This document shows, piece by piece, positions 1 to 61,802 of a DNA stretch of 64,000 nucleotides. The translations under genes were made by a program, and so were the position numbers. How positions within the stretch are numbered: position 1 is the stretch's first letter; each line of letters opens with the position of its first letter. This stretch comes from Gracilinanus agilis (lineage: Eukaryota): positions 166,026,044-166,090,043 of the forward strand of contig NC_058132.1 of assembly GCF_016433145.1 (NCBI RefSeq). The letters are read 5' to 3'. The notes beneath the pieces were generated by a model, which worked only from the letters and a program-made list of their open reading frames with translations, made no database searches and was not told the origin of the DNA.

Positions 1-1106
1 CAAACAAAAACAATGTAGTGAAAATCAGAAGGGAAACAACAAATTGGGAAAAAATCTTTATAACGAAAAACTCTGACAGGGGTCTAATTACTCAAATATA
101 CAAGGAGTTAAACCAATTGTATAAAACATCAAGCCATCCCCCAATTGATAAATGGGCAAGAGACATGAATAGGCAATTTTCAGGTAAAGAAATCAAAAGT
201 ATCAATAAGCACATGAGAAAGTGTTCCAAATCTCTAATAATTAGGGAAATGCAAATCAAAACAACTCTGAGGTATCACCTCACACCTAGCAGATTGGCTA
301 AAATGAAAGAAGGGGAGAGTAATGAATGTTGGAGGGGATGTGGCAAAATTGGGACATTAATGCATTGCTGGTAGAGCTGTGAACTGATCCAACCATTCTG
401 GCTGGCAATTTGGAATCATGCTCAAAGGGCTATAAAAGAATGCCTACCCTTTGATCCAGCCATACCATTGCTGGGTTTGTACCCCAGAGAGATCATAGAT
501 AAACAGAATTGTACGAAAATATTTATAGCTGCGCTTTTGGTGGTGGCAACAAATTGGAAAATGAGGGGATGTCCTTCAATTGGGGAATGGCTGAACAAAC
601 TGTGGTATATGCGGGTGATGGAATACTATTGTGCTAAAAGGAATAATAAACTGGAGGAGTTCCAGGCGAACTGGAGAGACCTCCGGGAACAGATGCAGAG
701 CGAAAGGAGCAGAGCCAGAAGAAAATTGTACACAGAGACTGATATACTGTGGTAAAATCGAATGTAATGGACCTCTGTACCAACAGCAATGCAATGACAC
801 ANNNNNNNNNNNNNNNNNNNNNNNNNNNNNNNNNNNNNNNNNNNNNNNNNNNNNNNNNNNNNNNNNNNNNNNNNNNNNNNNNNNNNNNNNNNNNNNNNNN
901 NATGATTGAGTGTGTGGACTCAAAACTACCACACCAATGCAACCACCAACAATTTGGAAATTGGTCTTGATCAAGGACACATGACAAAACTAGTGGAAAT
1001 GTGCATCGGCCATGGGTGGGGGGAGTGTGGGGGGCGAAGGGGAAAGGAGGAGCATGAATCATGTAACCATGTTAAAAATGAATATTAATAAATGTTTGAA
1101 AAAAAA
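1..1106 (+). mobile_element. Young L1 3' end (ORF2 C-terminus, 3'UTR, short poly(A)); 5' part lies outside the window
   Basis: ORFs 18..374 and 468..755 encode L1 ORF2p C-terminal motifs (ECWRGCGKIGTLMHCW, GEWLNKLWY, MEYY). G-rich 3'UTR at ~1010-1050 and A tract at 1099-1106. Nearly the same sequence as the L1s at 34490-35590 and 48697-50884. Confidence 0.95.
802..901. other. Assembly gap (100 N)
   Basis: Exactly 100 N in the sequence, inside the L1 3' region. Confidence 1.
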
Positions 1107-1270
1107 GATTATTACAAAGATGATTAATATGGAAACGTGTATTGAGTGATAATACCTGTATAACCCAGTGGAATTTCCTGTCGGCTCTGGGAGGCGGGGA
1201 GGAGGAAAAGGGAAGGAAGGTACATGAATTATGTAACCATGGAAAAATACTTAAATAAAAATTTAGAAAA
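1107..1270 (+). mobile_element. Older L1 3'UTR fragment directly after the young L1 tail
   Basis: Contains ataacccagtggaatt...ggaggaaaagggaagg...catgaattatgtaaccatggaaaaatac, resembling the L1 3' terminus seen elsewhere in the window. Confidence 0.6.
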
Positions 1271-2474
1271 AGATATTGTTTCTAACTACTTAAAAAAGAA
1301 AGCCATTATCTCCATAATCCAAAATAGATTGATTTTTAAAGGATACATGTGGAACAAAGTATTTTTTTAAAAAGGATTTTTAGATGAGGAAGCCTGGATA
1401 TTTTAATAAATACAGAAAACCTCAATTTAAGTAAATCATTTATCTTCCTGATGACCTCCATATGGAAAAGGAATAAAAATGTAGATTAAATGATAATACA
1501 ATTAGGCATGTCCAGACTTAGTTAATATTTATTTAAGTATTGTTAATGGATTTTTGATTGTAAGACTTTAGTGAAGTTCTCTAGATAGTTGTTTTTGGCT
1601 ACATTTTGTTTAAGATTTTATAATGATTGAGATAAAAGCATAGATATGATTCTTATGAAATAGAAAGTTGACATAAGGCTGGGCTGCATAATTGATAGGA
1701 AATATGACAAAGTTTGCATCTAAAATTATCTTGACAGACTGAAACAGCAAGCAAAATCTAATAAAATGAATTTTATGTATACTTTTATTCATTTTTTTAA
1801 TGGAAGGAAGAACTCCACTTATTGACAAGTATTACAGTGTACTTATACTTTACTGTGTACTTCTTTTTCTAAAAATAAAATTTGTTGATGTTCTTAAATC
1901 ACCATAGTTATCTCTAATAATACTATCTAATAATCTCTAATAATACTATCACAGTATTCTTTCCCCTATTTCTCCAAGAAACCCATTTTATATGATAAAT
2001 AAATAAAATAAAAATAAAAATTTTTAGAATGGAAAAAATTTCATCCTAAGTAGACTGACACAATAAAAAGTCCAAAACCATCTCCTTGAAGAGGGTAGGT
2101 CAGGGAAATAATTTTTGATTGTGGCACAGTCTAATCATGAGCACTTAATATTCTTCAGCTACTTAGCTTATTCTCTATTTCTTTAAAGGGCTCTTTGTAA
2201 TTGAACCTATGCAAGTCTTTTGTGTGTTTTGGGAGATGAGATCCACATTTTTTGTATTTATTTAGAAAGGGATTTCCCTTTGTATTATTGTTTCTTTTTA
2301 CTTTGTTATTGTTTTGTACATATGCTGTTTTATGTTGGTCGCTGCAACTTTGCTGAAGCTTTAAATTTTCAGTTAGTTGTCTGCTGATTTCCTAAGATGT
2401 TCCAAGTAAACTTTCATATTGTTGACTTATAGGAATTGTTTTATCTCCTCTCACCTATCATTTGTCTTTTAATT

Positions 2475-4150: not shown

Positions 4151-4963
4151 GTCTCACATGGTTGTCATGATCTGTTCTTTAAAACTCCTATGCATGGTAT
4201 TTTAGAGTTGTAAACTATCACTTTTCTATCCTGTTCAGTCCATTTGTAATGAAAATTAGACTAATTTGAGCCTGGTAAAGCCTTTAATCTAAGAATTAAT
4301 AATGTACAAATATAATAGAAATTACAGTAGCTCCAGTTTCTTAGCATAATAAAATCTATAAATAGCCAACAGCTATTTCAATGAGATATTGGAAAACTAC
4401 AAAACCCCTCTGAGATAACTCTCCAACTATTCAGAAAGAAAACTCCAGAGTTAGTTAGTTTTATTTCTGTGTCAGAAATAAAAAGGGGCTTTAGTTTCTA
4501 CAATGCCAGAATTTAATCTCCATTTCTAGTCAATTCAGGAATTTGCTAGGTGACTTTGTACACTTTAAACTTCAAACACATGAACAGAAGCTTGATAAAT
4601 AAAAGAGAATGTAAAATAAGGTTGGCGATTTCTCCCTCATTTTTTTCTTTTAAAATGTTATTTGTTGTTCTATAAGTCTTTAGAAAAAAGATAAGGGGGA
4701 AACAAAGAAGGGAGAAAGTTTTTATTTTGTTTATGTATTTCAATTGTATCTTACTATTTCTGACCTCATTTGGAATTTTCAATGATACCAGAAATGTTTT
4801 TGTCATTTATGTCTTCAGCTCATTTTACAGATAAGGAAACTGAGGCAAACAGAATAAATAACTTGCCTACACTCACACAGCAAATAAGTATTGGCTCAGA
4901 AATTAGATCTTCCTTGTTTTAGGGTTGGTGCTCTATTTATTGCTTTAAATAACTACTCCCATC

Positions 4964-5147
4964 TTTTTTTTTTAACCCTTAACTTCTGTGTATTGGCTCC
5001 TAGGTGGAAGAGTGGTAAGGATGGGCAATGGGGGTCAAGTGACTTGCCCAGGGTCACACAGCTGGGAAGTGTCAGAGGCCGGATTTGAACCTAGGACCTC
5101 CCATCTCTAGGCCTAACTCTCAATCCACTGAGCTACACAGCTGCCTC
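4964..5147 (-). mobile_element. Young opossum-type tRNA-derived SINE (SINE1_Mdo/SINE-1_MD-like)
   Basis: Reverse complement of the head (cagctgtgtagctcagtggattgagagt...ggttcaaatccggcc) with poly(T) at 4964-4973. Same family as the copies at 30125, 54356 and 61605. Confidence 0.9.
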
Positions 5148-17916: not shown

Positions 17917-18123
17917 TTTTATTTTTTTTAAAACCCTTACCTTCCGTCTTGGAGTCAATACTGTGTATTGGCTCCAAGGCAGAAGAGTGGTAAGGGTAGG
18001 CAATGGGGGTCAAGTGACTTGCCCAGGGTCACCCAGCTAGGAAGCATCTGAGGCCGGATTTGAACCTAGGACCTCCCATCTCTAGGCCTGGCTCTCAATC
18101 CACTGAACTACCCAGCTGCCCCC
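17917..18123 (-). mobile_element. Young SINE (SINE1_Mdo-like) with 15 bp TSD
   Basis: TSD tcatgcaataatttt at 17902-17916 and 18124-18138. Reverse-strand tRNA head and poly(T) tail. Confidence 0.92.
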
Positions 18124-20374: not shown

Positions 20375-21690
20375 GGATATCCATTCATATCCAAACCTTT
20401 AAGTGTTTTAATAGGAATGTGCTGTATTTTGTCAAAAGATTTTTCTGTATCTATTGATATAAATTACTTTGGTGATGTAACCAATTATATTAAACATTTC
20501 CCATGTAAAATTATATCTATATAATTGGCATAAAACCTGTTTGGTTATTATTTATAATTTTGATGACATATTGTTGTAGTCTCCTGACTAATATTTTATT
20601 TAGAATTTTTACATCCATATTCATTAATGGAATTGGTCTATAATTTTCTTCCTCTGTTTTTTATCTTACTGGTTTAGATATAATCTATGTATTTGTTTCA
20701 TGAAATGGGTTTGGTAGAATTTCTTCTTCACCAGTTGTCCTAAATAATTTATTTGATATTAGAACAAGATGATCTTTAAATATTTGATAAAATTCAATTG
20801 AAAATCCATCTGGCCCTGAGGCTTTTTTCTTAAGAAGTCCTTTCATAACCTGTACAATTTCATTTTCTATAATAGGTTTATTTAAATATTCTGTTTCCTC
20901 CTCTTTTGTGTAGGTGATTCATATTTTGTAAGTATTTATCCATTTTATTTAATATTTAATTTATTGACATATAATTAGGCAAGATAATTACTAATAATTG
21001 TTTTTATTTCATTTTCATTACTGTAAGTTCACCTTTTTTCATTTTCGAGGCTAGTGATTTGGTTTTCTTCTCACTCTTTTTAAATCATATTAGTCAATGA
21101 TTTGTCCCATTTGGTTTTTTCATGAAACTGCCTTAATTTTATTTATTAATTCAATAGTTTTTGTACATTCAGGTTTATTCATCTAAACCTTTAATTTTTA
21201 GGTTTTCCAATTTAGTATTTAATTAGGGATTTTTAAAACCCTTACCTTCTGGCTTAAAACCAATACTGTGTGCCTCAGTGGACAGAGAATCAGGCCTACT
21301 CACTTAATCCCCATTGCCTAGTCCTTATCACTCTTCTACCTTGGAGCCAATATTTAGTATTGATTCTAACATGGAAAGTAAGGGTTTTTTTTAAATCAAT
21401 ACTCTGAATCTGTTCCAAGTCAGAAGAGTGGTAAGGGCTAGCAAGGGGGTTAAAGTGACTTGCCCAGGGTAAGAGCTAGGAAAGTGTCTGAGGTCAGATT
21501 TGAACCCAGGACCTCCCATCTCTGGGACTGGCTCTCAATCCACTGAACTATGAAGGGGTATCCCCAATTTGTTTTTGTTTTCAGTCTTTTAGTTGTATAT
21601 TCAATTCATCCATCTATTCTTTCTCTATTTTCTTAATATAAGTATTTAAATATATAAATTTTCTTTTAATTATTGCTTGAGACATTGGAC
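20375..21690 (-). mobile_element. Old L1 ORF2 fragment, interrupted by nested SINEs
   Basis: Reverse-strand RT-region motifs (ttttgtcaaaagatttttctgtatctattgat, aaatccatctggccctgaggc). Confidence 0.7.
21231..21552. mobile_element. Nested SINEs: minus-strand SINE interrupted by an internally deleted plus-strand SINE (~21273-21392)
   Basis: Minus-strand tail 21231-21272 resumes at ~21393. Degenerate TSD aaaccaatactgtg (21257-21270) / aaatcaatactctg (21393-21406). Confidence 0.7.
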
Positions 21691-23930: not shown

Positions 23931-24697
23931 AACCCAAATATAGTTATATGGAAGCATGAATAGTGAGAAAGAGAATTATAATGGCTCCTTCAGTTGCCCA
24001 GAATTTAATCTATTCTTATATAATCCTTATCTACTTAATTTTCTTTTACCAAATGATTATTGGTCACTGATCCTCTACATGACCTTTTTCTTATTTTTGA
24101 CATGGAAATATTATCCCACCATAGGAAAGTACAGCCCCCAAGTAATGACTGATCCAACAGAATTCACGAATATGTTGTAAAAGCTAGAGGCAGAAAAATG
24201 CATATGAGTATTTAAAGAAAAAAACAGCTAAAAGTCATTCCCTTCCTTGTAGGATTTTATACAATTTATAGCTAAAAAAGCCTTCTAGTTGGATGTCTAT
24301 ATTTTATAGATGGGAAACTAAGGTCCACAGAACTTAATTGACTTACCCACGAGCTTTAAAGCAGCAAAGATGGGATTTTAACCCAGGTCTTGCTAATTCC
24401 AAATCAAAATATTCCATCCACTACAGCATATTTCATGTTGTCAGCAATTGTATTCCATTTTCCAACAGCCATATTTACATCTTTGCTATTCTAGAACAAA
24501 ACTGGAAAGAGATTCCATGACAATTACTATGAGGTTAGAAGAATCACTTGATATCCAGTGGCATAAAATGTAAAGGGTCTGAGAGAAAACAAGGATATCA
24601 ATCTACCATTTTGCATGAGATTCTGATGAGTAAGAGTAATTAGGAGTTTCTCTAAAGTAGTACTTCTTTCCTATCCCCACAGATGCTTTCCCAGAAA

Positions 24698-25630
24698 ATG
24701 GCCATGAGAAATAATTCTCCAGTGACTGAATTTATCCTTTCAGGGCTAACTGACTGGCCAGAGATCCAGCTGCCCCTCTTCTTCCTATTTCTTGGTGTTT
24801 ATGTGGTCACTGTGGTGGGGAACCTGGGCATGATCATACTGATTGGGCTCAGTTCTCACCTTCACACCCCCATGTACTATTTTCTCAGTAGCTTGTCCTT
24901 CATTGATCTCTGTCACTCCACTATAATCACACCCAAAATGCTGGTGAAATTTGTGTCAGAGTATAACATAATCTCCTATCCTGAGTGCATAACTCAGCTC
25001 TACTTCTTCCTTATTTTTGCTATAGCTGAGTGCCACATGTTGGCAGTGATGGCATATGATCGTTATGTTGCCATCTGTAACCCCCTGCTTTACAATGTCA
25101 CCATGTCCCATCAGGCCTGCTCATGGCTCATGGGTTGGGTGTACCTGCTGGGCTTAGTTGGTGCCACAGCTCACACCAGCTGCATTCTTAGAGTGCTCTT
25201 ATGTAAGAATCACATCAGTCATTACTTCTGTGATCTCCTTTCCCTCTTGAAGCTCTCTTGTTCCAGTACTTATGTCAATGAAGTGGTGATTTTGTGCTTT
25301 AGTGCATTTAATATCCTCATCCCCAGCATTACCATTATCTGCTCCTACATCTGCATCATTGCCAGCATCCTCCAAATTCGCTCCTCTGAAGGGAGGTCCA
25401 AGGCTTTCAGTACCTGCAGCTCTCATGTGTCAGCAGTTGCCCTCTTCTATGGCTCTGCCGCATTCATATATCTGCAGCCCTCTTCAGAAAACTCCACAGA
25501 CCAGGAAAAAGTGTCTTCTGTTTTTTATACCATCTTTGTGCCCATGTTGAACCCCCTGATCTATAGCCTGAGAAACAAGGATGTAAAAGTTGCCATCATG
25601 AAAATTCTGGAGAGGAGAAGGCTCATATAA
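24698..25630 (+). CDS. Olfactory receptor family 8-like, 310 aa (315 aa from the in-frame ATG at 24683), intact
   Basis: [12 protein letters not shown] start and all OR motifs ([55 protein letters not shown]). Acceptor ...ccccacag| ends at 24682. Confidence 0.95.
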
Positions 25631-28170: not shown

Positions 28171-28854
28171 TATGGCCAAGCTTTATTATATAGAGATGAA
28201 AAAAAGTAAGTTAAATACATAGAAGTCATGATTTCATTTGTGTACTATCTTCCTTTATTTGGGGAAATTTTTTTTTGCCTTTTTTTGTAAAATTTGGGGA
28301 AAAAATTTAAAAAGGAAAGCCAAAAAACAAAAAGAATTTTGGCATAATAAGCATGCAACATTCATAGATAGTTTATAGAAAGCTGTTACTTTGAGATTAA
28401 TAGGTTCTCTTTTTGGCCTATCTAGGAGTTGTATCCATTCTGACTAAATAAGATAACCCATCTCTGTCTTAATGGTATGAACAGGGTCATTCTATATTCA
28501 ATTTATTTTAGTACATTAACATATATGTTTCTAGCTATGATCTTCTGAAGTATTATTTAATGTATATTTTAGTTGTATGTGTATTTGATAAATACTTTCA
28601 CTTTTCAATGAGAAGTCTGTGAGTTTGTAATTTATCAGATTATATTTCACAAAACATGCAATCACTATATTTATTAACTCATTTAATTTTCTGGTATCTA
28701 AACCATTGATCATTATAGTCTTTAAATAGCCAAACAATTCATGGAGGTTCAAGCCATTTATGTAATTTAAATAATATTTCAATAACTCCTAGACAAAAGA
28801 AATCTATAGGAACAAAAAATCACATAAAAGTTGCTTTCAAAAATATAAAAGCAG

Positions 28855-31800
28855 TTTCAGGTTAGGATGGTGGCAGAGTAGAAGCAGCTTGCTTAACCAC
28901 TCCTAACCCACACATACTGGACTCCTCAAGAAGGCATAAAAAACAAATCCAGACAAACGAAGGGAAGCCACAACAGAGTGCAGCATTGAAGGTACGTGGA
29001 ATCGGGGCATTTCCATGCTATAATGGGATGAAACAGCTCTCACTAAAACGTGAGCTGAGCAACCCCTTTCCATCACACCACCTACAGTGCCAAAGACAGT
29101 GCACAAGAGCTAGAGCAAGCTTGGGGCACCCATTATGTCCTTGGCAGCTACCTAGGGTCACCAGGGCCTGCTCCTTAGAGCACCACAACTTAAGACCCCA
29201 AGAGGCTAAAGAACTCGCACACTTTGAACACAGACCTGGAGCACAAGTGTGGACAGGGATCGTGAGCTCAGGCATGGACTCAAGTTCAGACTCGGATCCT
29301 GAGCACAGGCACAGATGAGGAGTTTCAGACAGAGGAACAAGCAAGGGGACCACCAGGAGGCTTGACCCTGAGAACAACTAGACCTGTGACCTTAGGAGCC
29401 TAAAGAGTGCATACAGACCCTGGGTGTGAGGATAAACCTGAAAGGGCACACAGCTCACAATAGCAAGCCATCCACAGGAACCCCAAAAGAGAAAGATCAG
29501 CAAGAAGAAATCTGTAACACTCGACAACTTTTATACAGAGAAAATCCAGACAACAGAGCAAACAGCAGAGGAGAATAAACAAATAATCATATCCAAACCT
29601 TCCCAAAATAATGAAAACTGGTCACAAGTTCTTGAAAAGTTGAAATCTGAGAAGATGAAAAAGATGGAAGAGATTTGGTGAGAGAAGTGGGAGATAGCTT
29701 AAAAGGAAATTAACAGGTTAGAAAACAGAAACTCCCAGTTGGAGAAAGATGCCCCAAAATCAAACGAAATGGTAAGCAAATTGGAAACCAAAATGGGCAA
29801 AAAAAAAAATAATAACAGTTTAAAAGGCAGAATTTTGCAATTAGAAAAAGTTAATCGAAGACCAGAAATGACCGGATTGAAAAGGAAAACCAGTCTCTAA
29901 AGGCTAGAATTGAGCAATTAGAAACTAATGACCTCTCCAGACAGCAAGAGCAAATAAAACAAAGTCAAAAAACTAATAAAATAGAAGGAAACATGAAATA
30001 TCTCAATGAGAAACTGACAGATCAAGAAAACAGGTTTAGAAGAGACAAATTGAGAATCAATGGTCTCACTGAAAAAGTAGAAATTAATAGACATTTGGAC
30101 TCCATACTAAAAGAAATTATTCAGCGGGGCAGCTGGGTAGCTCAGTGGAGTGAGAGTCAGGCCTAGAGACAGAAGGTCTTAGGTTCAAACGCGGCCTCAG
30201 CCACTTCCCAGCTGTGTGACCCTGGGCAAGTCACTTGAACCCCATTGCCCACCCTTACCACTCTTCTACCAGACAATACACCGAAGTACAAGGGTTTAAA
30301 AAAAAAGAACTATAAAAGAAATTATTCAGTAAAACTGCCCTGAAGTTCTACAACAAAAGGGCAATATAGGCATTGAAAGGATCCATAGATCACCCTCTAC
30401 ACTAGACCCTGAAAAGACAACACCCACGAATATAATAGACAAATTCAAGAGCTTCCAAGTAAAAGAAAAAAATTTTACAAGAAGCCAGAAAGAGACAATT
30501 CAGATATCAAGGAGCACCAATCAGGATCACACAGGATCTGGCAGCCTCCATGCTAAAAGACAGCAAGGCTTGGAATATGATATTCAGAAAGGCAAGAGAA
30601 ACTGGGTCTACAACCAAGGATCACCTACCCATAAAAACTGACTATATACTTCCAGGGGAAAGTTTGGGCATTTAACAAGATAGAAAATTTCCAAGTATTT
30701 GCACAGAAAAGACCAGGACTAAAAGGAAAGTTTGATATCCAATCACAAAAATTAAGAGAAACATGAAAAGGTAAATAAGAAACAGAGGGGAAAGAAAGAA
30801 AACTCTTATTTTTAAAATTTGCCTCTTTAAGGACTTCAATAAGATCTAATTATTTGTATTACTATGTGGAGAAATGTTATGTATAATTCTCTGTAGTGAA
30901 CTCTATTCACTATTACAGTATTCACTATTATAGTAATGAGAAGAATTATTCATAGGGAGAGGTTGGAGTACTAAATGATCTAAGATGATATGGGGGGGCG
31001 GGTAGGAAAGAGGAGAGTGAATAGTAGAGGACACCAAGAGAAATTTGAATGAATAAGAAAAATAGGATATTCTATTACACACAAAGAGGACATGGGAAGA
31101 GGAGGGGAAGAATACTTTTATAAGAAGGAGAGGAAAAGAGCATTAAGAGTTAATAATTAAACCTTATTCTCAGTGGAATTAACCCTGAGAGGGAAGAGTA
31201 GCTATATCCTTTTGGGATATAAAACTCTATCTAACCCTACTGAGCAAGTCAGAAGAGATAAACCAAGGGGAGCAGGGGACTGGGGAGGTCAAAAAAGGGA
31301 TGGGAGAAGAAGGGGGAGGGAATTTATTAGGCCTTAAAAATAAAAAGAGAGGAATAATAAGGGAGGGGACAGAAAGGGAAGTAAATCAAGGGAGAGGACA
31401 GGGGTTACTGGCTTAAAGCAAACCACTGGTTTAAAAGGAAATAGGGTAAGAAGAAGGAGTAGAACTAGGAGAGGATACCAAAATGTTGGCGAATAAACCA
31501 CTGATAATTATAACTCTGAATGTGAATGGGATGAACTCGGCCATAAAAAGGAATCAAATAGCAGAGTGCATGAGAAACCAAAATCCTACCATATGTTGTC
31601 TACAAGAAACACATATGAGGCAGATGGACATACACAGGTTTAAAGTAAAGGGCTTGAGCAAAATCTTTCGGGCTTCAAATGAGAAAAATAAGGCATGATT
31701 TCTGACAAAGCCAAAGTAAAAATAGATATGATTAAAAAAGACAGGGAAGGTCATTACATCCTGATAAAAGGCAATATAGACAATGAGGAAATAACAGTGC

Positions 31801-34800
31801 TCAATATGTATGCACCAAATGGCACAGCATCGAAATTCATAAAGGAGAAACTGGAAGAGCTCAAGAAGGAAATAGATAGCAAAACCATAATAGTGGGAGA
31901 TCTAAATATTCCTCTTTCAGATCTAGATAAATCAAACCAAAAAAATAAATAAGAAAGAGGTAAAAGAGGTGAATGAAGTCCTATAAAAATTAGATTTAAT
32001 AGATATGTGGAGAAAAACAAATAGGGAAAAAAGTAATATACCTTCTTTTCAGCTGCACATGGTACATTCACAAAGATTGACAATGTAATAGGGCATAGAA
32101 ACATTGCAAACAAATGCAAAAGAGGAGAAATAATAAATGTAACCGTCTCAGATCATAGTGCGATAAAAATAATAATTATTAAGGGCACCTGGACAAGCAA
32201 ATCAAAAACTAATTGGAAATTAAGTAATGTGATTCTCCAAAACCAGTTAGTCAAAGAAGAAATCATAGAAACAATCAACAATTTCATTGAAGAGAATGAC
32301 AATGATAAGACATCCTACCAAACTCTGTAGGATGCATCTAAGGCAGTACTCAGGGGGAAATTTATATCCTTGAGTGCATATATTAACAAATTAGGGAGTC
32401 CAGGGATTAAAGAATTGGGCATGCAACTCAAAAAAATAGAAAGCGAGCAAATTAAAAATTCTCAGATGAAAACTAAATTAGAAATACTAAAAATCAAGGG
32501 AGAAATTAATAAAATCGAAAGTAAAAGAACTATTGAATTAATAAATAGGACTAGAAGCTGGTATTTTGAAAAAACAGATAAAATAGACAAGGTACTGGTC
32601 AATCTAATAAAAAAAATTAAAGAAGAAAACCAAATTGATGGTATCAAAGATGAAAAGGGAGACCTCACCTCTAATGAAGGGGAAATTAAGGCAATCATTA
32701 AAAACTATTTCGCCCAACTATATGGCAATAAACATAACAACTTAGGAGATGTGGATGAATATTTACAAAAATATAAATTGCCTAGATTAACAGCAGAAGA
32801 AATAGAATACCTAAAAAATCCCATATTAGAAATAGAAATTGAACAAGCCATTAAAGAACTCCCTAAGAAAAAATCACCAGGACCTGATGGATTCACAAGT
32901 GAATTCTATCAGACATTCAAAGAGCAACTAATCCCAATACTATACAAATTATTTGATATGATAAGCAAAGAAGGAGTCCTACCAAATTCCTTTTATGACA
33001 CAAATATGGTACTGATTCCAAAGCCAGGTAGATCAAAAACAGAGAAAGAAAACTACAGACCAATCTCCCTAATGAATACAGATGCAAAAATCTTAAATAG
33101 AATACTAGCAAAGATACTCCAGCAAGTGATCAAGGGGATTATCCATCATGGTCAAGTGGGATTTATACTAGGAATGCAAAGATGGTTCAACATTAGGGAA
33201 ATCATCCACATAATTGACCATATCAACAATCTAAAAACAAAAATCACATGATTATCTCAACAGATGCTGAAAAAGCCTTTGACAAAATATAGCAGCAATT
33301 CCTATTAAAAACTCTGGAAAGTATAGGAATAGAAGGATCTTTCCTAAAAATAATAAACAATATATAGCTAAAACCATCTACAAGCATCATATGCAATGGG
33401 GATAAATTAGAAGCCTTCCCAATAAGATCAGGAGTGAAACAAGGATGCCCATTGTCACTTCCATTATTTAACATTGTACTAGAAACAATAGCAGTAAGTA
33501 GAAATTAGAGAAGAAAAAGAAATTGAAGGTATCAAAATAGGCAATGAGGAGACTAAGCTATCACTTTTTGCAGATGATATGATGGTCTACTTAAAAAATC
33601 CTAGAGAATCAACTAAGAAGCTTGTAGAAATAATCAACAACTTTAGCAAAGTTGCAGGATACAAAATAAATGCACATGAATCATCAGCATTTCTATATAT
33701 TTCCAAAAGATTAGAGCAGCAAGAGGTAGAAAGAGAAACACCATTTAAAATCACCCTAGAGAATATAAAATACTTAGGAATCTATCTACCAAAACAAACA
33801 CAGGAATTATATGAAAACAACTACAAAATACTTTCCAAACAATTAAAACTAGATCTAAACAATTAGAAAACATTGAGTAGTCATGGGTAGGATGAGCTAA
33901 CATAATAAAAATGACCATTCTACCCAAATTAATTTACCTATTTAGAATCATACCTATCAAACTACCAAAAAACTTTTTACTGAATTAGAAAAAACTAGAA
34001 CAAAGTTTATCTGGAATAACAAACGATCAAGAATATCAAGGGAAATAATGAAAAAAAATGTGAAGTAAGGTGGTCTAGCAGTACCAGATATACTATAAAG
34101 CAGAGGTCATCAAAACAGAAGGGAGGATCAGTGGAATAGACTTGGGGTAAGTGACATCAGCAAGACAGTGTATGATAAACCCAAAGAGCCCAACTTTTGG
34201 GACAAAAATCCACTATTTGACAAAAACTGCTGGGAAATTTGGAAAACAATATGAGAGAGATTAGGCTTAGATCAACATCTCACACCCTACACCAAGATGA
34301 ATTCAGAATGTGTGAATGACTTGAATATAAAGAGGGAAACTATAAATAAGTGAACACAGAATAGTATACTTGTCAGATCTCTGGGAAAGAAAAGATTTCA
34401 AAACCAAGCAAGAGTTAGAGAAAATTAAAAAATGTAAATTAAATGATTTTGATTATATCAAACTAAATAGCTTTTGTACAAACAAAAACAATGCAGCCAA
34501 AATCAGAAGGGAAACAACAAATTGGGAAAAAATCTTTACAACAAAAAACTCTGAGAGGGGTCTAATACTCAAATATACAAGGAGTTAAAGCAATTATATA
34601 AAAAATCAAGCCATTCCCCAATTGATAAATGGGCAAGAGACATGAATAGGCAATTTTCAGGTAAAGAAATCAAAAGTATCAATAAGCACATGAGAAAGTG
34701 TTCTAAATCTTTAATAATTAGAGAAATGCAAATCAAAACAACTCTGAGGTATCACCATACCCCTAGCAAATTGGCTAAAATGGCAGAAGGGGAGAGTTAT

Positions 34801-35596
34801 GAATGTTGGAGGGGATGTGGCAAAATTGGGACATTAATGCATCGCTGGTGGAGTTGTGAACTGATTCAACCATTCTGGATGGCAATTTGGAATCATGCTC
34901 AAAGGGCTATAAAAGACTGCCTGCCCTTTGATCCAGCCATACCATTGTTGGGTTTGTACCCCAAAGAGATCATAGATAAACAGACTTGTACAAAAATATT
35001 TATGGCCGTGCTTTTTGTAGTGGCAAAAACCTGGAAAATGAAGGTATGCCCTTCGATTGGGGAATGGCTGAACAAATTGTGGTATATGCTGGAGATGGAA
35101 TACTATTGTGCTCAAAGGAATAATAAACTGGAAGAATTCCATGTGAACTGGAAAGACCTCCAGGAATTGATGCAGAGTGAAAGGAGCAGAGCCAGAAGAA
35201 CATTGTACACAGAGATCAACACACTGTCATAAAATAGAATGTAACGGACATCTGTACTAGCAGCAATGCAATGACCCAGGACAATTCTGAGGGACTTATG
35301 GTAAAGAATGCTACCCACATTCAGAGGAACAACTGCAGGAGTGGAAACACAGAAGAAAAGCAACTGCTTGAACACATGGGTTGACATGGACATGATTAGG
35401 GATGTAGACTCAAAACTACCACACCAATGCAACTATCAACAATTTAGAAATAGGTCTTGATCAATGACACAAGTTAAAATCAGTGGAAATGCACACCGGA
35501 TGTGGGGGGGAGGGGAGGCTGGGGAGGTGAAGGGGAAAGTAAGAGCATGAATCATGTAACCATGTTAACTTTTCTAAAACATAAATATTAAAAAAA
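28855..35596 (+). mobile_element. Full-length L1 (5'UTR, ORF1, ~700 bp inter-ORF spacer, ORF2, 3'UTR), inactivated by frameshifts, stops and a SINE
   Basis: 5' end ggatggtggcagagtagaag. ORF1 from ~29460 to ~30775. ORF2 fragments 31483-31952 (endonuclease: LNVNG, CCLQETH, GDLN), 32370-33251 (PGPDGF, YRPISL), 33579-33866 (after FADD, KYLGI) and 34642-35232. A tract at 35590-35596. Confidence 0.97.
30125..30312 (+). mobile_element. Young SINE inserted in L1 ORF1, 17 bp TSD
   Basis: TSD taaaagaaattattcag at 30108-30124 and 30313-30329. A and B boxes with retained CpGs. Confidence 0.95.
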
Positions 35597-35845
35597 TTTT
35601 TTAAAATTTTGGCAATATTCCTGAGTTTTTTGGGTTTCTAGAAATGCTTTAAAATGTTATGGGTAAGGTCTTTTCATAATTAACTTTCTGTGAGAAAGTT
35701 ACACCCCTAAGAATGATGTAATGCTAAAGAACTCATGATTGGTTACTGATGCAGTAATAATGTTCCTTTAATTGTTTGAGAAAATTTTTTTCTATTTTTC
35801 TGGAATGGATTCTCAATAAAATATGAACTTGTGGCAGAAAAAAAA
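35597..35845 (+). mobile_element. Putative L1 3'-transduced segment with its own poly(A) signal and A tail
   Basis: Non-L1 sequence after the L1 A tract, AATAAA at 35815-35820, A run from 35838, then ataaaagcag (35845-35854), which matches 28845-28854 at the L1 5' end. Confidence 0.7.
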
Positions 35846-35994
35846 TAAAAGCAGCAATGAAGGAGTATCATGGGGTTTCAGAAGCTCTCATTTTCACTAA
35901 TGTCTCACCCTAAAATAAATGCGATGATCATAAAGAGCCATAATGAATTAATCAAAAATGAGTCTGTTATTTAAGATTACTCTCATTATTAATG

Positions 35995-54355: not shown

Positions 54356-54617
54356 GGGGGCAGCTGGGTAGCTCAGTAGATTGAGAGTCAGGCCTAGAGA
54401 TGGGAGGTCCTAGGTTCAAATCCGGCCTCAGACACTTCCCAGCTGTGTGACCCTGGGCAAGTCACTTGACCCCCATTGCCTACCCTTACCACTCTTTCAC
54501 CTATAAGTTGTAAGAAGAAAATTTAGGTGGTTCCTGGTGGCCACATATTTAATATATATCTATAAATACCTAAATTTTCCTTCTTACAAAGTCAATATGC
54601 AGAAGTTAAGGGTTTAA

Positions 54618-60945: not shown

Positions 60946-61604
60946 GGTCCGATTTTTCTTACACATAGCAGTATTTTAAGTTCATAAAGTTTCTAAATGT
61001 TTTTTTCTCAAGCCTGAGCATCACTATTTCCTTCAAATGATTGTAATGTGTGGTGTTTATGAGAATTGTATACTGAGAGTTTCTTCACACACGTTAAAGT
61101 GACAAAAGTATTTTACATCTGCACAAGTAAACGGATTCCCTGCAGTAACACTATTAACAGCTGGTAAGCTTATATTTTGATGTATTATAACTCTTCTGTC
61201 AATGTTTTCTCAATTTGTTTCCTCACACTTACAGAGCTTTAGAGCACACAAAATTGAAGAGATCAATGTTGAGTTTTTATGAACGTTTAGGATTTTACAA
61301 GATTACTGCAAACTAGTGGTGACATGGGTAAGTGACTAATGACTATACAGCTTACTGCATGACACAAAGACATCCACAGCTTGGAGCAGTTTATAATCCT
61401 AAAACATAAGACATTTACCAAAGAGAAAGAAATATCACATTAGTAATATATGAAAGAATAGATTTAAGCCACAATTCAACCAGTCAGTTGATTGAGTAGA
61501 TCAAGTACAGGCTTAAAGGAAACAGATGAAAATTGAGTTGAATTACATAACAAAAGGCAGTCAAACCTAGAGATAAGACAGAACTGTTAAAAGTACACAA
61601 GCAG

Positions 61605-61786
61605 GTGCAGCTGGGTAGCTCAGTGGAGTGAGAGCCAGGCCTAGAGACAGGAGGTCCTAGGTTCAAACCCTGCCTCAGCCACTTCCCAGTTGTGTGACCC
61701 TGGGCAGGTCACTTGACCCCCATTGCCCACCCTTACCACTCTTCCACCTATGAGACAATACACCGAAAGTACAAGGGTTTAAAAAA
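61605..61786 (+). mobile_element. Young SINE with 16 bp TSD
   Basis: TSD aaaagtacacaagcag at 61589-61604 and 61787-61802. Tail gagacaatacaccgaaagtacaagggttt is nearly the same as in the copy at 30125. Confidence 0.95.
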
Positions 61787-61802
61787 AAAAGTACACAAGC
61801 AG

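What the first reader, a model, noticed from the sequence alone, without database searches (positions are those of the whole stretch)
28839..35854. Full-length L1 with an apparent ~240 bp 3' transduction
No TSD follows the L1's own A tract (35590-35596). Instead ~240 bp of non-L1 sequence follows, then AATAAA (35815-35820), an A run starting 17 nt later (35838), and a match to the 5' flank: aaaaatataaaagcag (28839-28854) versus aaaaaaataaaagcag (35839-35854), 15 of 16 identical. L1, short A tract, unique DNA, poly(A) signal, poly(A) and TSD is the established signature of 3' transduction. The carried segment is a lineage tag pointing to the source element, and such events are poorly catalogued in marsupials.
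Basis: partly seen in the sequence, partly recalled or inferred. Interest (0 to 1): 0.7.

Follow-up and report, generated by a model that had tools for sequence, protein, structure and literature searches.

The report
Old opossum L1 with 3' passenger DNA
A decayed full-length L1 jumping gene in an opossum genome carries about 240 bases of foreign DNA behind its own tail, inside one pair of insertion scars; this is most likely an ordinary "3' transduction", though its source could not be looked up here.

Summary
A structurally full-length but dead L1 (28855-35596) is followed by 241 nt of non-L1 DNA. Then come AATAAA (35815-35820), 17 nt, an A8 run (35838-35845) and a 15/16 direct repeat of the 5' flank (28839-28854 vs 35839-35854).

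- **The repeat is unlikely to be chance.** It is the only match of 15/16 or better between the flanks. Random places in the window give one 0.2-0.6% of the time, and its 10-mer core occurs nowhere else in the window.
- **No repeat follows the L1's own A7 tract.**
- **The extra DNA is not the family's 3' UTR.** The two closest L1 relatives in the window end in AATAAA plus an A tail without the 241 nt. The focal copy lacks that AATAAA.

The signature of 3' transduction therefore holds (confidence about 0.6).

A short poly(A) retrocopy dropped into the L1's tail would look identical. The window holds one such arrangement, at 1100-1270.

3' transduction is well known, including 94 somatic events in Tasmanian devil tumours. 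The scan's first readers flagged three other candidates in this genome, all unchecked. Ordinary; low interest.

The parts
28839..28854 (+). 5' copy of the target-site duplication (aaaaatataaaagcag). The implied bottom-strand nick is TTTTT/G, between 28838 and 28839.
28855..29840 (+). L1 5' end and about 1 kb of 5' UTR. The first 5 nt (tttca, 28855-28859) are either L1 or filler. The 3' limit is an estimate from the position of the ORF1 domain. No other copy in the window covers this part.
29841..30950 (+). ORF1 remnant (limits approximate). The Transposase_22 RBD-like match lies at 30348-30494. The remnant is interrupted by the nested SINE.
   Evidence: E 0.0011, just below Pfam's cut-off
30125..30306 (+). 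Nested tRNA-like SINE with an A9 tail (30298-30306). It has its own 16-nt perfect TSD, aaaagaaattattcag, at 30109-30124 and 30314-30329. It is a later, separate insertion.
31450..35232 (+). ORF2 remnant with many stops and frame changes. Endonuclease matches lie at 31510-31632 and 31791-31931; reverse-transcriptase matches at 33015-33224 and 33549-33785.
35233..35589 (+). L1 3' UTR with the G-rich tract and the catgaatcatgtaaccatg motif shared with the relatives. The relatives' AATAAA is missing here (it reads CATAAA or AAAAAA depending on the alignment). Only ATTAAA at 35587 remains.
35590..35596 (+). The L1's own A7 tract. The relatives' tails are 6-8 A.
35597..35837 (+). 241-nt non-L1 passenger segment, 29% G+C, with six T runs of 4 or more. 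It has no other copy in the window.
35815..35820 (+). AATAAA poly(A) signal, 17 nt before the A run.
35838..35845 (+). A8 run: the remnant of the new poly(A) tail, merging into the A-rich start of the TSD.
35839..35854 (+). 3' copy of the target-site duplication (aaaaaaataaaagcag), 15/16 identical to the 5' copy.

Best explanation
This is one L1 retrotransposition event that carried 3' flanking DNA of its source element (3' transduction).

Inferred sequence of events:
1. A source L1 elsewhere in the opossum genome was transcribed from its internal promoter.
2. RNA polymerase II passed the L1's own weak or damaged poly(A) site.
3. The transcript was cleaved and polyadenylated about 240 nt further on, 17 nt after a genomic AATAAA.
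4. The L1 endonuclease nicked the target at TTTTT/G, and the whole read-through RNA was reverse-transcribed in place.
5. The result was TSD, full-length L1, the source's A tract, 241 nt of source flank, a new A tail and TSD.

Shown here: the anatomy, the non-chance flanking repeat, the lack of a repeat after the L1's own A tract, and the absence of the segment from two related L1 copies. Inferred: the read-through itself and the existence of a source locus.

The element has since decayed. It is not active, and a SINE has landed in its ORF1.
For: - **L1 identity and completeness.** ORF1 RBD, endonuclease and reverse-transcriptase matches lie in canonical order over 6.7 kb.
- **Flanking repeat.** The 15/16 repeat brackets L1 plus segment. 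It is the only such match between the flanks, has an empirical chance of 0.2-0.6%, and its 10-mer core is unique in the window.
- **No repeat next to the L1's own A tract**.
- **Poly(A) signal.** AATAAA lies 17 nt before the terminal A run, about 3.5% by chance.
- **Segment is not family 3' UTR.** The two nearest relatives (423-1108 on +, 50884-48690 on -; 89-91% identical) end ...aataaatgtttg + A8 or A6 without the segment.
- **Lost signal.** The focal copy has lost the relatives' AATAAA, which would favour read-through.
- **Not a Pol III SINE.** T runs of 4-7 inside the segment argue against one.
- **Consistent age.** One mismatch in 16 nt fits the 1.4-1.8 expected from the L1's 9-11% divergence from its relatives.
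- **Typical length.** 241 nt is close to the human mean of 206 bp for transduced sequences (PMC9311842).
- **Known in marsupials.** The process is documented in Tasmanian devil tumours.
- **TSD length fits the machinery here.** The SINE nested in this same L1 has a 16-nt TSD.
Against: - The defining evidence is missing: no source locus and no empty site were obtained.
- The new poly(A) tail is at most 8 A, and only 1 A if the full 16-nt repeat is taken as TSD.
- The loss of the L1's AATAAA may have happened after insertion.
- The implied nick site TTTTT/G is a variant of the TTTT/A consensus, not the consensus itself (the consensus is from established knowledge).
- An independent short retrocopy abutting an L1 tail exists in this very window at about 1100-1270. 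Two-event look-alikes therefore do occur here.
- Two relatives cannot exclude a small L1 subfamily that carries the segment as its regular 3' end.
Confidence: 0.6

Rival explanations
1. Two events. The L1 inserted normally with the 28839/35839 TSD. Later a short, 5'-truncated poly(A) retrocopy landed in the L1's A tail in the same orientation. This retrocopy could be the 3' end of a cellular mRNA or of an unrecognised Pol II retroposon. Its own TSD would be made of A's only and so would be invisible.
For: - A tails are preferred L1-endonuclease targets (established knowledge).
- A runs lie on both sides of the segment, A7 and A8.
- The segment ends like an mRNA, with AATAAA plus 17 nt.
- In this same window a related L1's A8 tail (about 1100-1107) is followed directly by an independent 5'-truncated L1 3' end (about 1110-1270).
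Against: - The segment resembles no L1 3' end or other repeat in the window. It lacks the G-rich tract and the catgaatcatgtaaccatg motif.
- By far the commonest short retrocopies are truncated L1s and SINEs. The T runs argue against a Pol III SINE.
- The right-hand A8 would have to hold the insert's tail, an A-only TSD and the rest of the L1 tail.
- It needs two events where one suffices.
Confidence: 0.2
2. The flanking repeat is coincidental or irrelevant. The 241 nt are original target DNA, and the L1's true TSD is lost or was never made, through decay, a 3' flank deletion or endonuclease-independent insertion.
For: Both repeat copies are A-rich and of low complexity. The terminal A run is short. 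The L1 is old and decayed.
Against: A match of 15/16 or better occurs at only 0.2-0.6% of random place pairs, and in 0 of 4806 tests with this flank. The 10-mer core is unique in 128 kb of both strands. The repeat sits exactly at the L1 5' end and exactly after AATAAA + 17 nt + A run, with a joint chance well under 1%.
Confidence: 0.07
3. Template-switch chimera. Reverse transcription began on the poly(A) tail of a cellular mRNA, copied its last roughly 240 nt, then jumped to the 3' end of an L1 RNA and copied all of it. This would be a single insertion with a single TSD.
For: It gives the same layout, including a few A's at the junction. Template switching by LINE reverse transcriptases is documented from birds to mammals, and opossum is among the genomes surveyed (PMC4476161).
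Against: In catalogued chimeras the switch goes from L1 RNA or a trans-mobilised mRNA to U6 or U6atac, and 'might be restricted' to these snRNAs (PMC4476161). L1 as the second template, copied for 6.5 kb, is not the usual form. Such chimeras are far rarer than transductions (established knowledge; not measured here).
Confidence: 0.06
4. The 241 nt are the regular 3' end of a small L1 subfamily, that is, an older transduction that became fixed as a new 3' UTR extension and was copied on. This copy would then be an ordinary insertion of that subfamily.
For: The focal copy's terminal 35 nt differ markedly from its relatives' and lack their AATAAA. That is what a lineage dependent on a downstream signal would look like.
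Against: Both relatives in the window, at 89-91% identity, end without it. There is no second copy of the segment in 64 kb rich in L1 3' ends.
Confidence: 0.05

Closest known systems
L1 3' transduction (read-through of the L1 poly(A) signal; Moran 1999, Goodier 2000 and Pickeral 2000, as listed in PMC9311842 and described in PMC6681178)
   Same: The order is TSD, L1, short A tract, non-L1 DNA, AATAAA, A run, TSD, all in one orientation. The 241-nt length is near the human mean of 206 bp.
   Different: The source element is not identified. The new tail is nearly gone. The copy is old and dead, so it does not mark a currently active source.
Somatic L1 3' transductions in Tasmanian devil transmissible cancers (bioRxiv 10.1101/2022.05.27.493404)
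   Same: It is the same process in a marsupial: 94 insertions with 3' transductions and 35 source elements.
   Different: Those events are recent, somatic and traced to their sources by read mapping. This one is an old germline copy in a didelphid, with its source untraced.
Chimeric retrocopies by L1 reverse-transcriptase template switching (Buzdin 2002/2003; PMC4476161)
   Same: Two unrelated RNA-derived parts sit inside one TSD with a terminal poly(A).
   Different: Known chimeras have U6 or U6atac as the 5' part and a truncated L1 or mRNA as the 3' part. Here the L1 is the 5' part and is full length.
Nested retrocopy in an L1 A tail (for example the arrangement at window 1100-1270)
   Same: A short poly(A)-ended piece lies directly after an L1's short A tract, in the same orientation.
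   Different: At 1100-1270 the added piece is recognisably an L1 3' end. The focal segment matches nothing in the window.

Membership tests
L1 (LINE-1) retrotransposon, structurally full-length copy | ORF1 (Transposase_22), then ORF2 endonuclease, then reverse transcriptase, in order on one strand, with a 5' UTR and a 3' UTR ending in an A tract | tested here: met
   Pfam matches lie at 30348-30494, 31510-31931 and 33015-33785. The ORF1 and endonuclease matches fall slightly below Pfam's cut-offs because the frames are broken; RVT_1 is above its cut-off. The 3' end is homologous to two other L1 copies.
L1 3' transduction | Non-L1 DNA follows the L1's own 3' end and A tract in the same orientation, and is not part of the family's 3' UTR | tested here: met
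   The test is limited to the two relatives present in the window.
L1 3' transduction | The extra DNA ends with a poly(A) signal 10-30 nt before a poly(A) tail | tested here: met
   AATAAA at 35815-20, then 17 nt, then A8. The tail is very short.
L1 3' transduction | One target-site duplication brackets L1 plus extra DNA, and none lies directly after the L1's own A tract | tested here: met
   15/16 repeat with a chance of 0.2-0.6%. No repeat at 35597 onwards.
L1 3' transduction | The extra DNA occurs elsewhere in the genome directly 3' of the source L1 (or of its empty site), with different onward flanks | not testable with these tools
The assemblies GCA_016433145.1 and GCA_027887165.1 were located, but no DNA was returned.
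L1 3' transduction | An orthologous or allelic empty site lacks L1 and extra DNA together and holds one copy of the TSD | not testable with these tools
   The Monodelphis orthologue of the neighbouring OR gene was identified (XP_007495112.1), but its locus could not be read.
L1 endonuclease-dependent insertion | The target nick resembles TTTT/A on the bottom strand, and the TSD is about 7-20 nt | tested here: inconclusive
   The 16-nt TSD fits. The nick site reads TTTTT/G, a variant and not the consensus. The consensus is from established knowledge.
Template-switch chimeric retrocopy | The 5' partner is U6, U6atac or another small RNA joined to a 5'-truncated L1 or mRNA 3' partner | tested here: not met
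   The 5' partner is a full-length L1. The definition is from PMC4476161.

The most novel reading that the evidence does not exclude
The focal copy descends from an L1 lineage that had lost its own AATAAA and so depended on the downstream signal. The 241-nt tag would then be shared by a set of sibling copies. That would be a new L1 3' UTR caught in the act of being acquired in didelphid opossums, and a usable lineage marker.
Probability: 0.08. Interest if true: 0.35.

Novelty: new member of a known kind. Interest (0 to 1): 0.15.

Why it matters
If confirmed, the segment is a barcode linking this dead copy to its source locus. It would be one data point for how often didelphid L1s read through their own poly(A) site. 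It changes nothing about how L1 is understood to work. The process has been textbook knowledge since 1999-2000 and is already shown in a marsupial. Its practical value is as a clean, well-delimited test case for a genome-wide catalogue of transductions in the Gracilinanus assembly.

Tried and rejected
- **Orthologous or allelic locus via the neighbouring intact OR gene (24683-25630).** The exact protein is on record only in GCA_016433145.1, with no DNA ('file too large'). Its 90% cluster holds the Monodelphis orthologue XP_007495112.1, whose locus in GCA_027887165.1 also gave no DNA. I did not spend search for homologous proteins on more distant orthologues, because chromosome-scale assemblies are unreadable here and short contigs would not span the 3.2 kb to the site.
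- **Second copy of the segment in the window.** There is none. The best weak match, 35719-35805 against 28213-28290 (about 68% over 88 nt), has an expected count of about 0.3 over the window. I rejected it as chance, although it lies right after an old L1's A tail.
- **Minus-strand retrocopy.** I considered whether the T6 at 35597 is the tail of a minus-strand retrocopy. There is no TTTATT within 45 nt, so I rejected this.
- **L1 inserted just upstream of an older short retrocopy.** I rejected this because no TSD flanks the L1 alone.
- **Papers.** PMC1899126, PMC310862 and PMC156586 are not held.

Full report
**What is there.**
The window comes from assembly GCA_016433145.1. The intact olfactory-receptor protein encoded at 24683-25627 matches a record of that assembly exactly, on a 683-Mb sequence. 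From memory, and according to an earlier follow-up note of this scan (s1-192260), that is the agile gracile opossum, Gracilinanus agilis.

Between 28855 and 35596 lies one contiguous L1 on the + strand. Stop-free pieces give Pfam matches in canonical order:
- ORF1 RBD-like domain at 30348-30494
- endonuclease at 31510-31632 and 31791-31931
- reverse transcriptase at 33015-33224 and 33549-33785

About 1 kb precedes ORF1, and the 3' UTR (35233-35589) is homologous to other L1 copies in the window. So the element is structurally full length. It is long dead: no ORF exceeds 293 aa, and every frame of the ORF2 region holds dozens of stops. A tRNA-like SINE with its own 16-nt perfect TSD sits in ORF1 at about 30125-30306.

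**The observation.**
Every coordinate in the finding is right. The L1 ends in A7 (35590-35596). Then follow 241 nt (35597-35837), which hold AATAAA at 35815-35820 followed by 17 nt. Next come A8 (35838-35845) and aaaaaaataaaagcag (35839-35854), which matches aaaaatataaaagcag (28839-28854) at 15 of 16 positions.

Several tests bear on whether this repeat is chance:
- It is the only match of 13/16 or better between the 96 nt around the L1's 5' end and the 516 nt after its 3' end, apart from shifted registers of itself.
- Random pairs of places in the same window give 15/16 or better in 0.2% (30-nt 5' piece) to 0.6% (95-nt piece) of trials. This 5' flank never reached 15/16 against 4806 random 515-nt pieces.
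- The 10-mer core occurs only at these two places on both strands of the window.
- An AATAAA in the right range before a given point is expected about 3.5% of the time.
- Immediately after the L1's own A tract nothing matches the 5' flank beyond AAAAAAT.
- One mismatch in 16 fits the element's age. It differs by 9-11% from its nearest relatives, which predicts 1.4-1.8 mismatches between two TSD copies.

**Is the segment L1?**
Two related copies lie in the window: 1-1108 on + (interrupted by the N gap at 802-901) and 50884-48690 on -, at 89-91% identity. Both end ...catgtaaccatgttaaaaatgaatattaataaatgtttg followed by A8 or A6 and then unrelated DNA. Neither carries the 241 nt.

The segment lacks the G-rich tract and the catgaatcatgtaaccatg motif that mark the L1 3' ends seen here, including a more distant one at about 1140-1270. 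It has no second copy in the window by BLAST or by Smith-Waterman scanning of both strands. Its best weak match (28213-28290) has an expected count of about 0.3 per window, so I take it as chance. Six T runs of 4-7 nt make a Pol III SINE unlikely.

The focal L1 has lost the AATAAA that both relatives keep. Depending on the alignment it reads CATAAA or AAAAAA, and only ATTAAA at 35587 remains. That would favour read-through, but the change could equally have come after insertion.

**Mechanism.**
The simplest account is a single event. A source L1 was transcribed past its own poly(A) site. The RNA was cleaved 17 nt after a genomic AATAAA about 240 nt downstream. The whole RNA was then inserted by target-primed reverse transcription at a TTTTT/G nick, giving a 16-nt TSD.

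The anatomy and the statistics are shown; the read-through and the source are inferred. The 241-nt length is ordinary: the mean in human polymorphic events is 206 bp (PMC9311842).

**Rivals.**
- **Two events: a short retrocopy in the L1's A tail.** A short, 5'-truncated poly(A) retrocopy inserted into the L1's A tail gives exactly the same picture, because its TSD would consist of A's. This is not hypothetical here. At about 1100-1270 a related L1's A8 tail is followed directly by an independent truncated L1 3' end. Against it, the focal segment is neither L1 nor SINE, which are the usual short retrocopies, and two events are needed. I give it 0.2.
- **Template switching.** This also fits formally. 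But catalogued chimeras run from L1 or mRNA to U6 or U6atac (PMC4476161), not from an mRNA to a full-length L1. I give it 0.06.
- **Chance repeat, with the segment as original target DNA.** The statistics above argue against this. I give it 0.07.
- **A small subfamily carrying the segment as its regular 3' end.** I give it 0.05.

That leaves about 0.6 for plain 3' transduction.

**What could not be done.**

The neighbouring OR gene led to its Monodelphis orthologue (XP_007495112.1). The DNA of both chromosome-scale assemblies is not retrievable with these tools. None of the other collections on hand (viral, metagenome, and bacterial and archaeal genome contigs; phage, plasmid and E. coli records) holds marsupial genomes, so none could be used.

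**Comparison and novelty.**
3' transduction is a long-established L1 behaviour (PMC6681178; reference list of PMC9311842). It is documented in a marsupial: 94 somatic events from 35 sources in Tasmanian devil tumours. First readers of this scan flagged three other candidate 3' transductions in this same genome (s1-179314, s1-173188, s1-154157). These are unchecked, and I count them only as a sign that the pattern is not rare.

This is a probable new member of a known kind. It is cleanly delimited, but dead and untraced. Interest is low.

Noticed in passing
window 30104-30329: A tRNA-like SINE (about 182 nt with an A9 tail, 30125-30306) is nested in the focal L1's ORF1. Its perfect 16-nt TSD aaaagaaattattcag lies at 30109-30124 and 30314-30329. 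Five more copies are in the window at 80-92% identity: 4962-5145 (-), 17963-18122 (-), 21422-21550 (-), 54357-54496 (+), 61604-61789 (+).
   Followed up: partly
window 1060-1275: A related L1 ends in A8 at about 1100-1107. It is followed directly by a second, 5'-truncated L1 3' end of another subfamily (about 1110-1270, ending aaataaaaatttagaaaaag). Two retrocopies sit tail to head, which shows that independent insertions at L1 tails occur in this region.
   Followed up: partly
window 28213-28290 vs 35719-35805: There is a weak similarity (about 68% over 88 nt, Smith-Waterman score 23.5 against a window maximum of 19.5 elsewhere) between part of the passenger segment and DNA lying right after the A7 tail of an old L1 fragment (27805 to about 28205). 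The expected count over the window is about 0.3, so it is probably chance. The position behind another L1 tail is curious.
   Followed up: yes
window 24683-25630: An intact 315-aa olfactory-receptor gene (7tm_4) lies 3.2 kb upstream of the L1. Its Monodelphis domestica orthologue, at 90% identity or more, is XP_007495112.1 (OR 8G1). It is a useful anchor for finding the orthologous insertion site.
   Followed up: partly
window 35562-35607: The last roughly 35 nt of the focal L1 differ much more from its relatives than the rest of the 3' UTR does. There is an extra cttttct, the AATAAA is lost, and an A7-T6-A4-T4 run follows that is partly self-complementary.
   Followed up: partly
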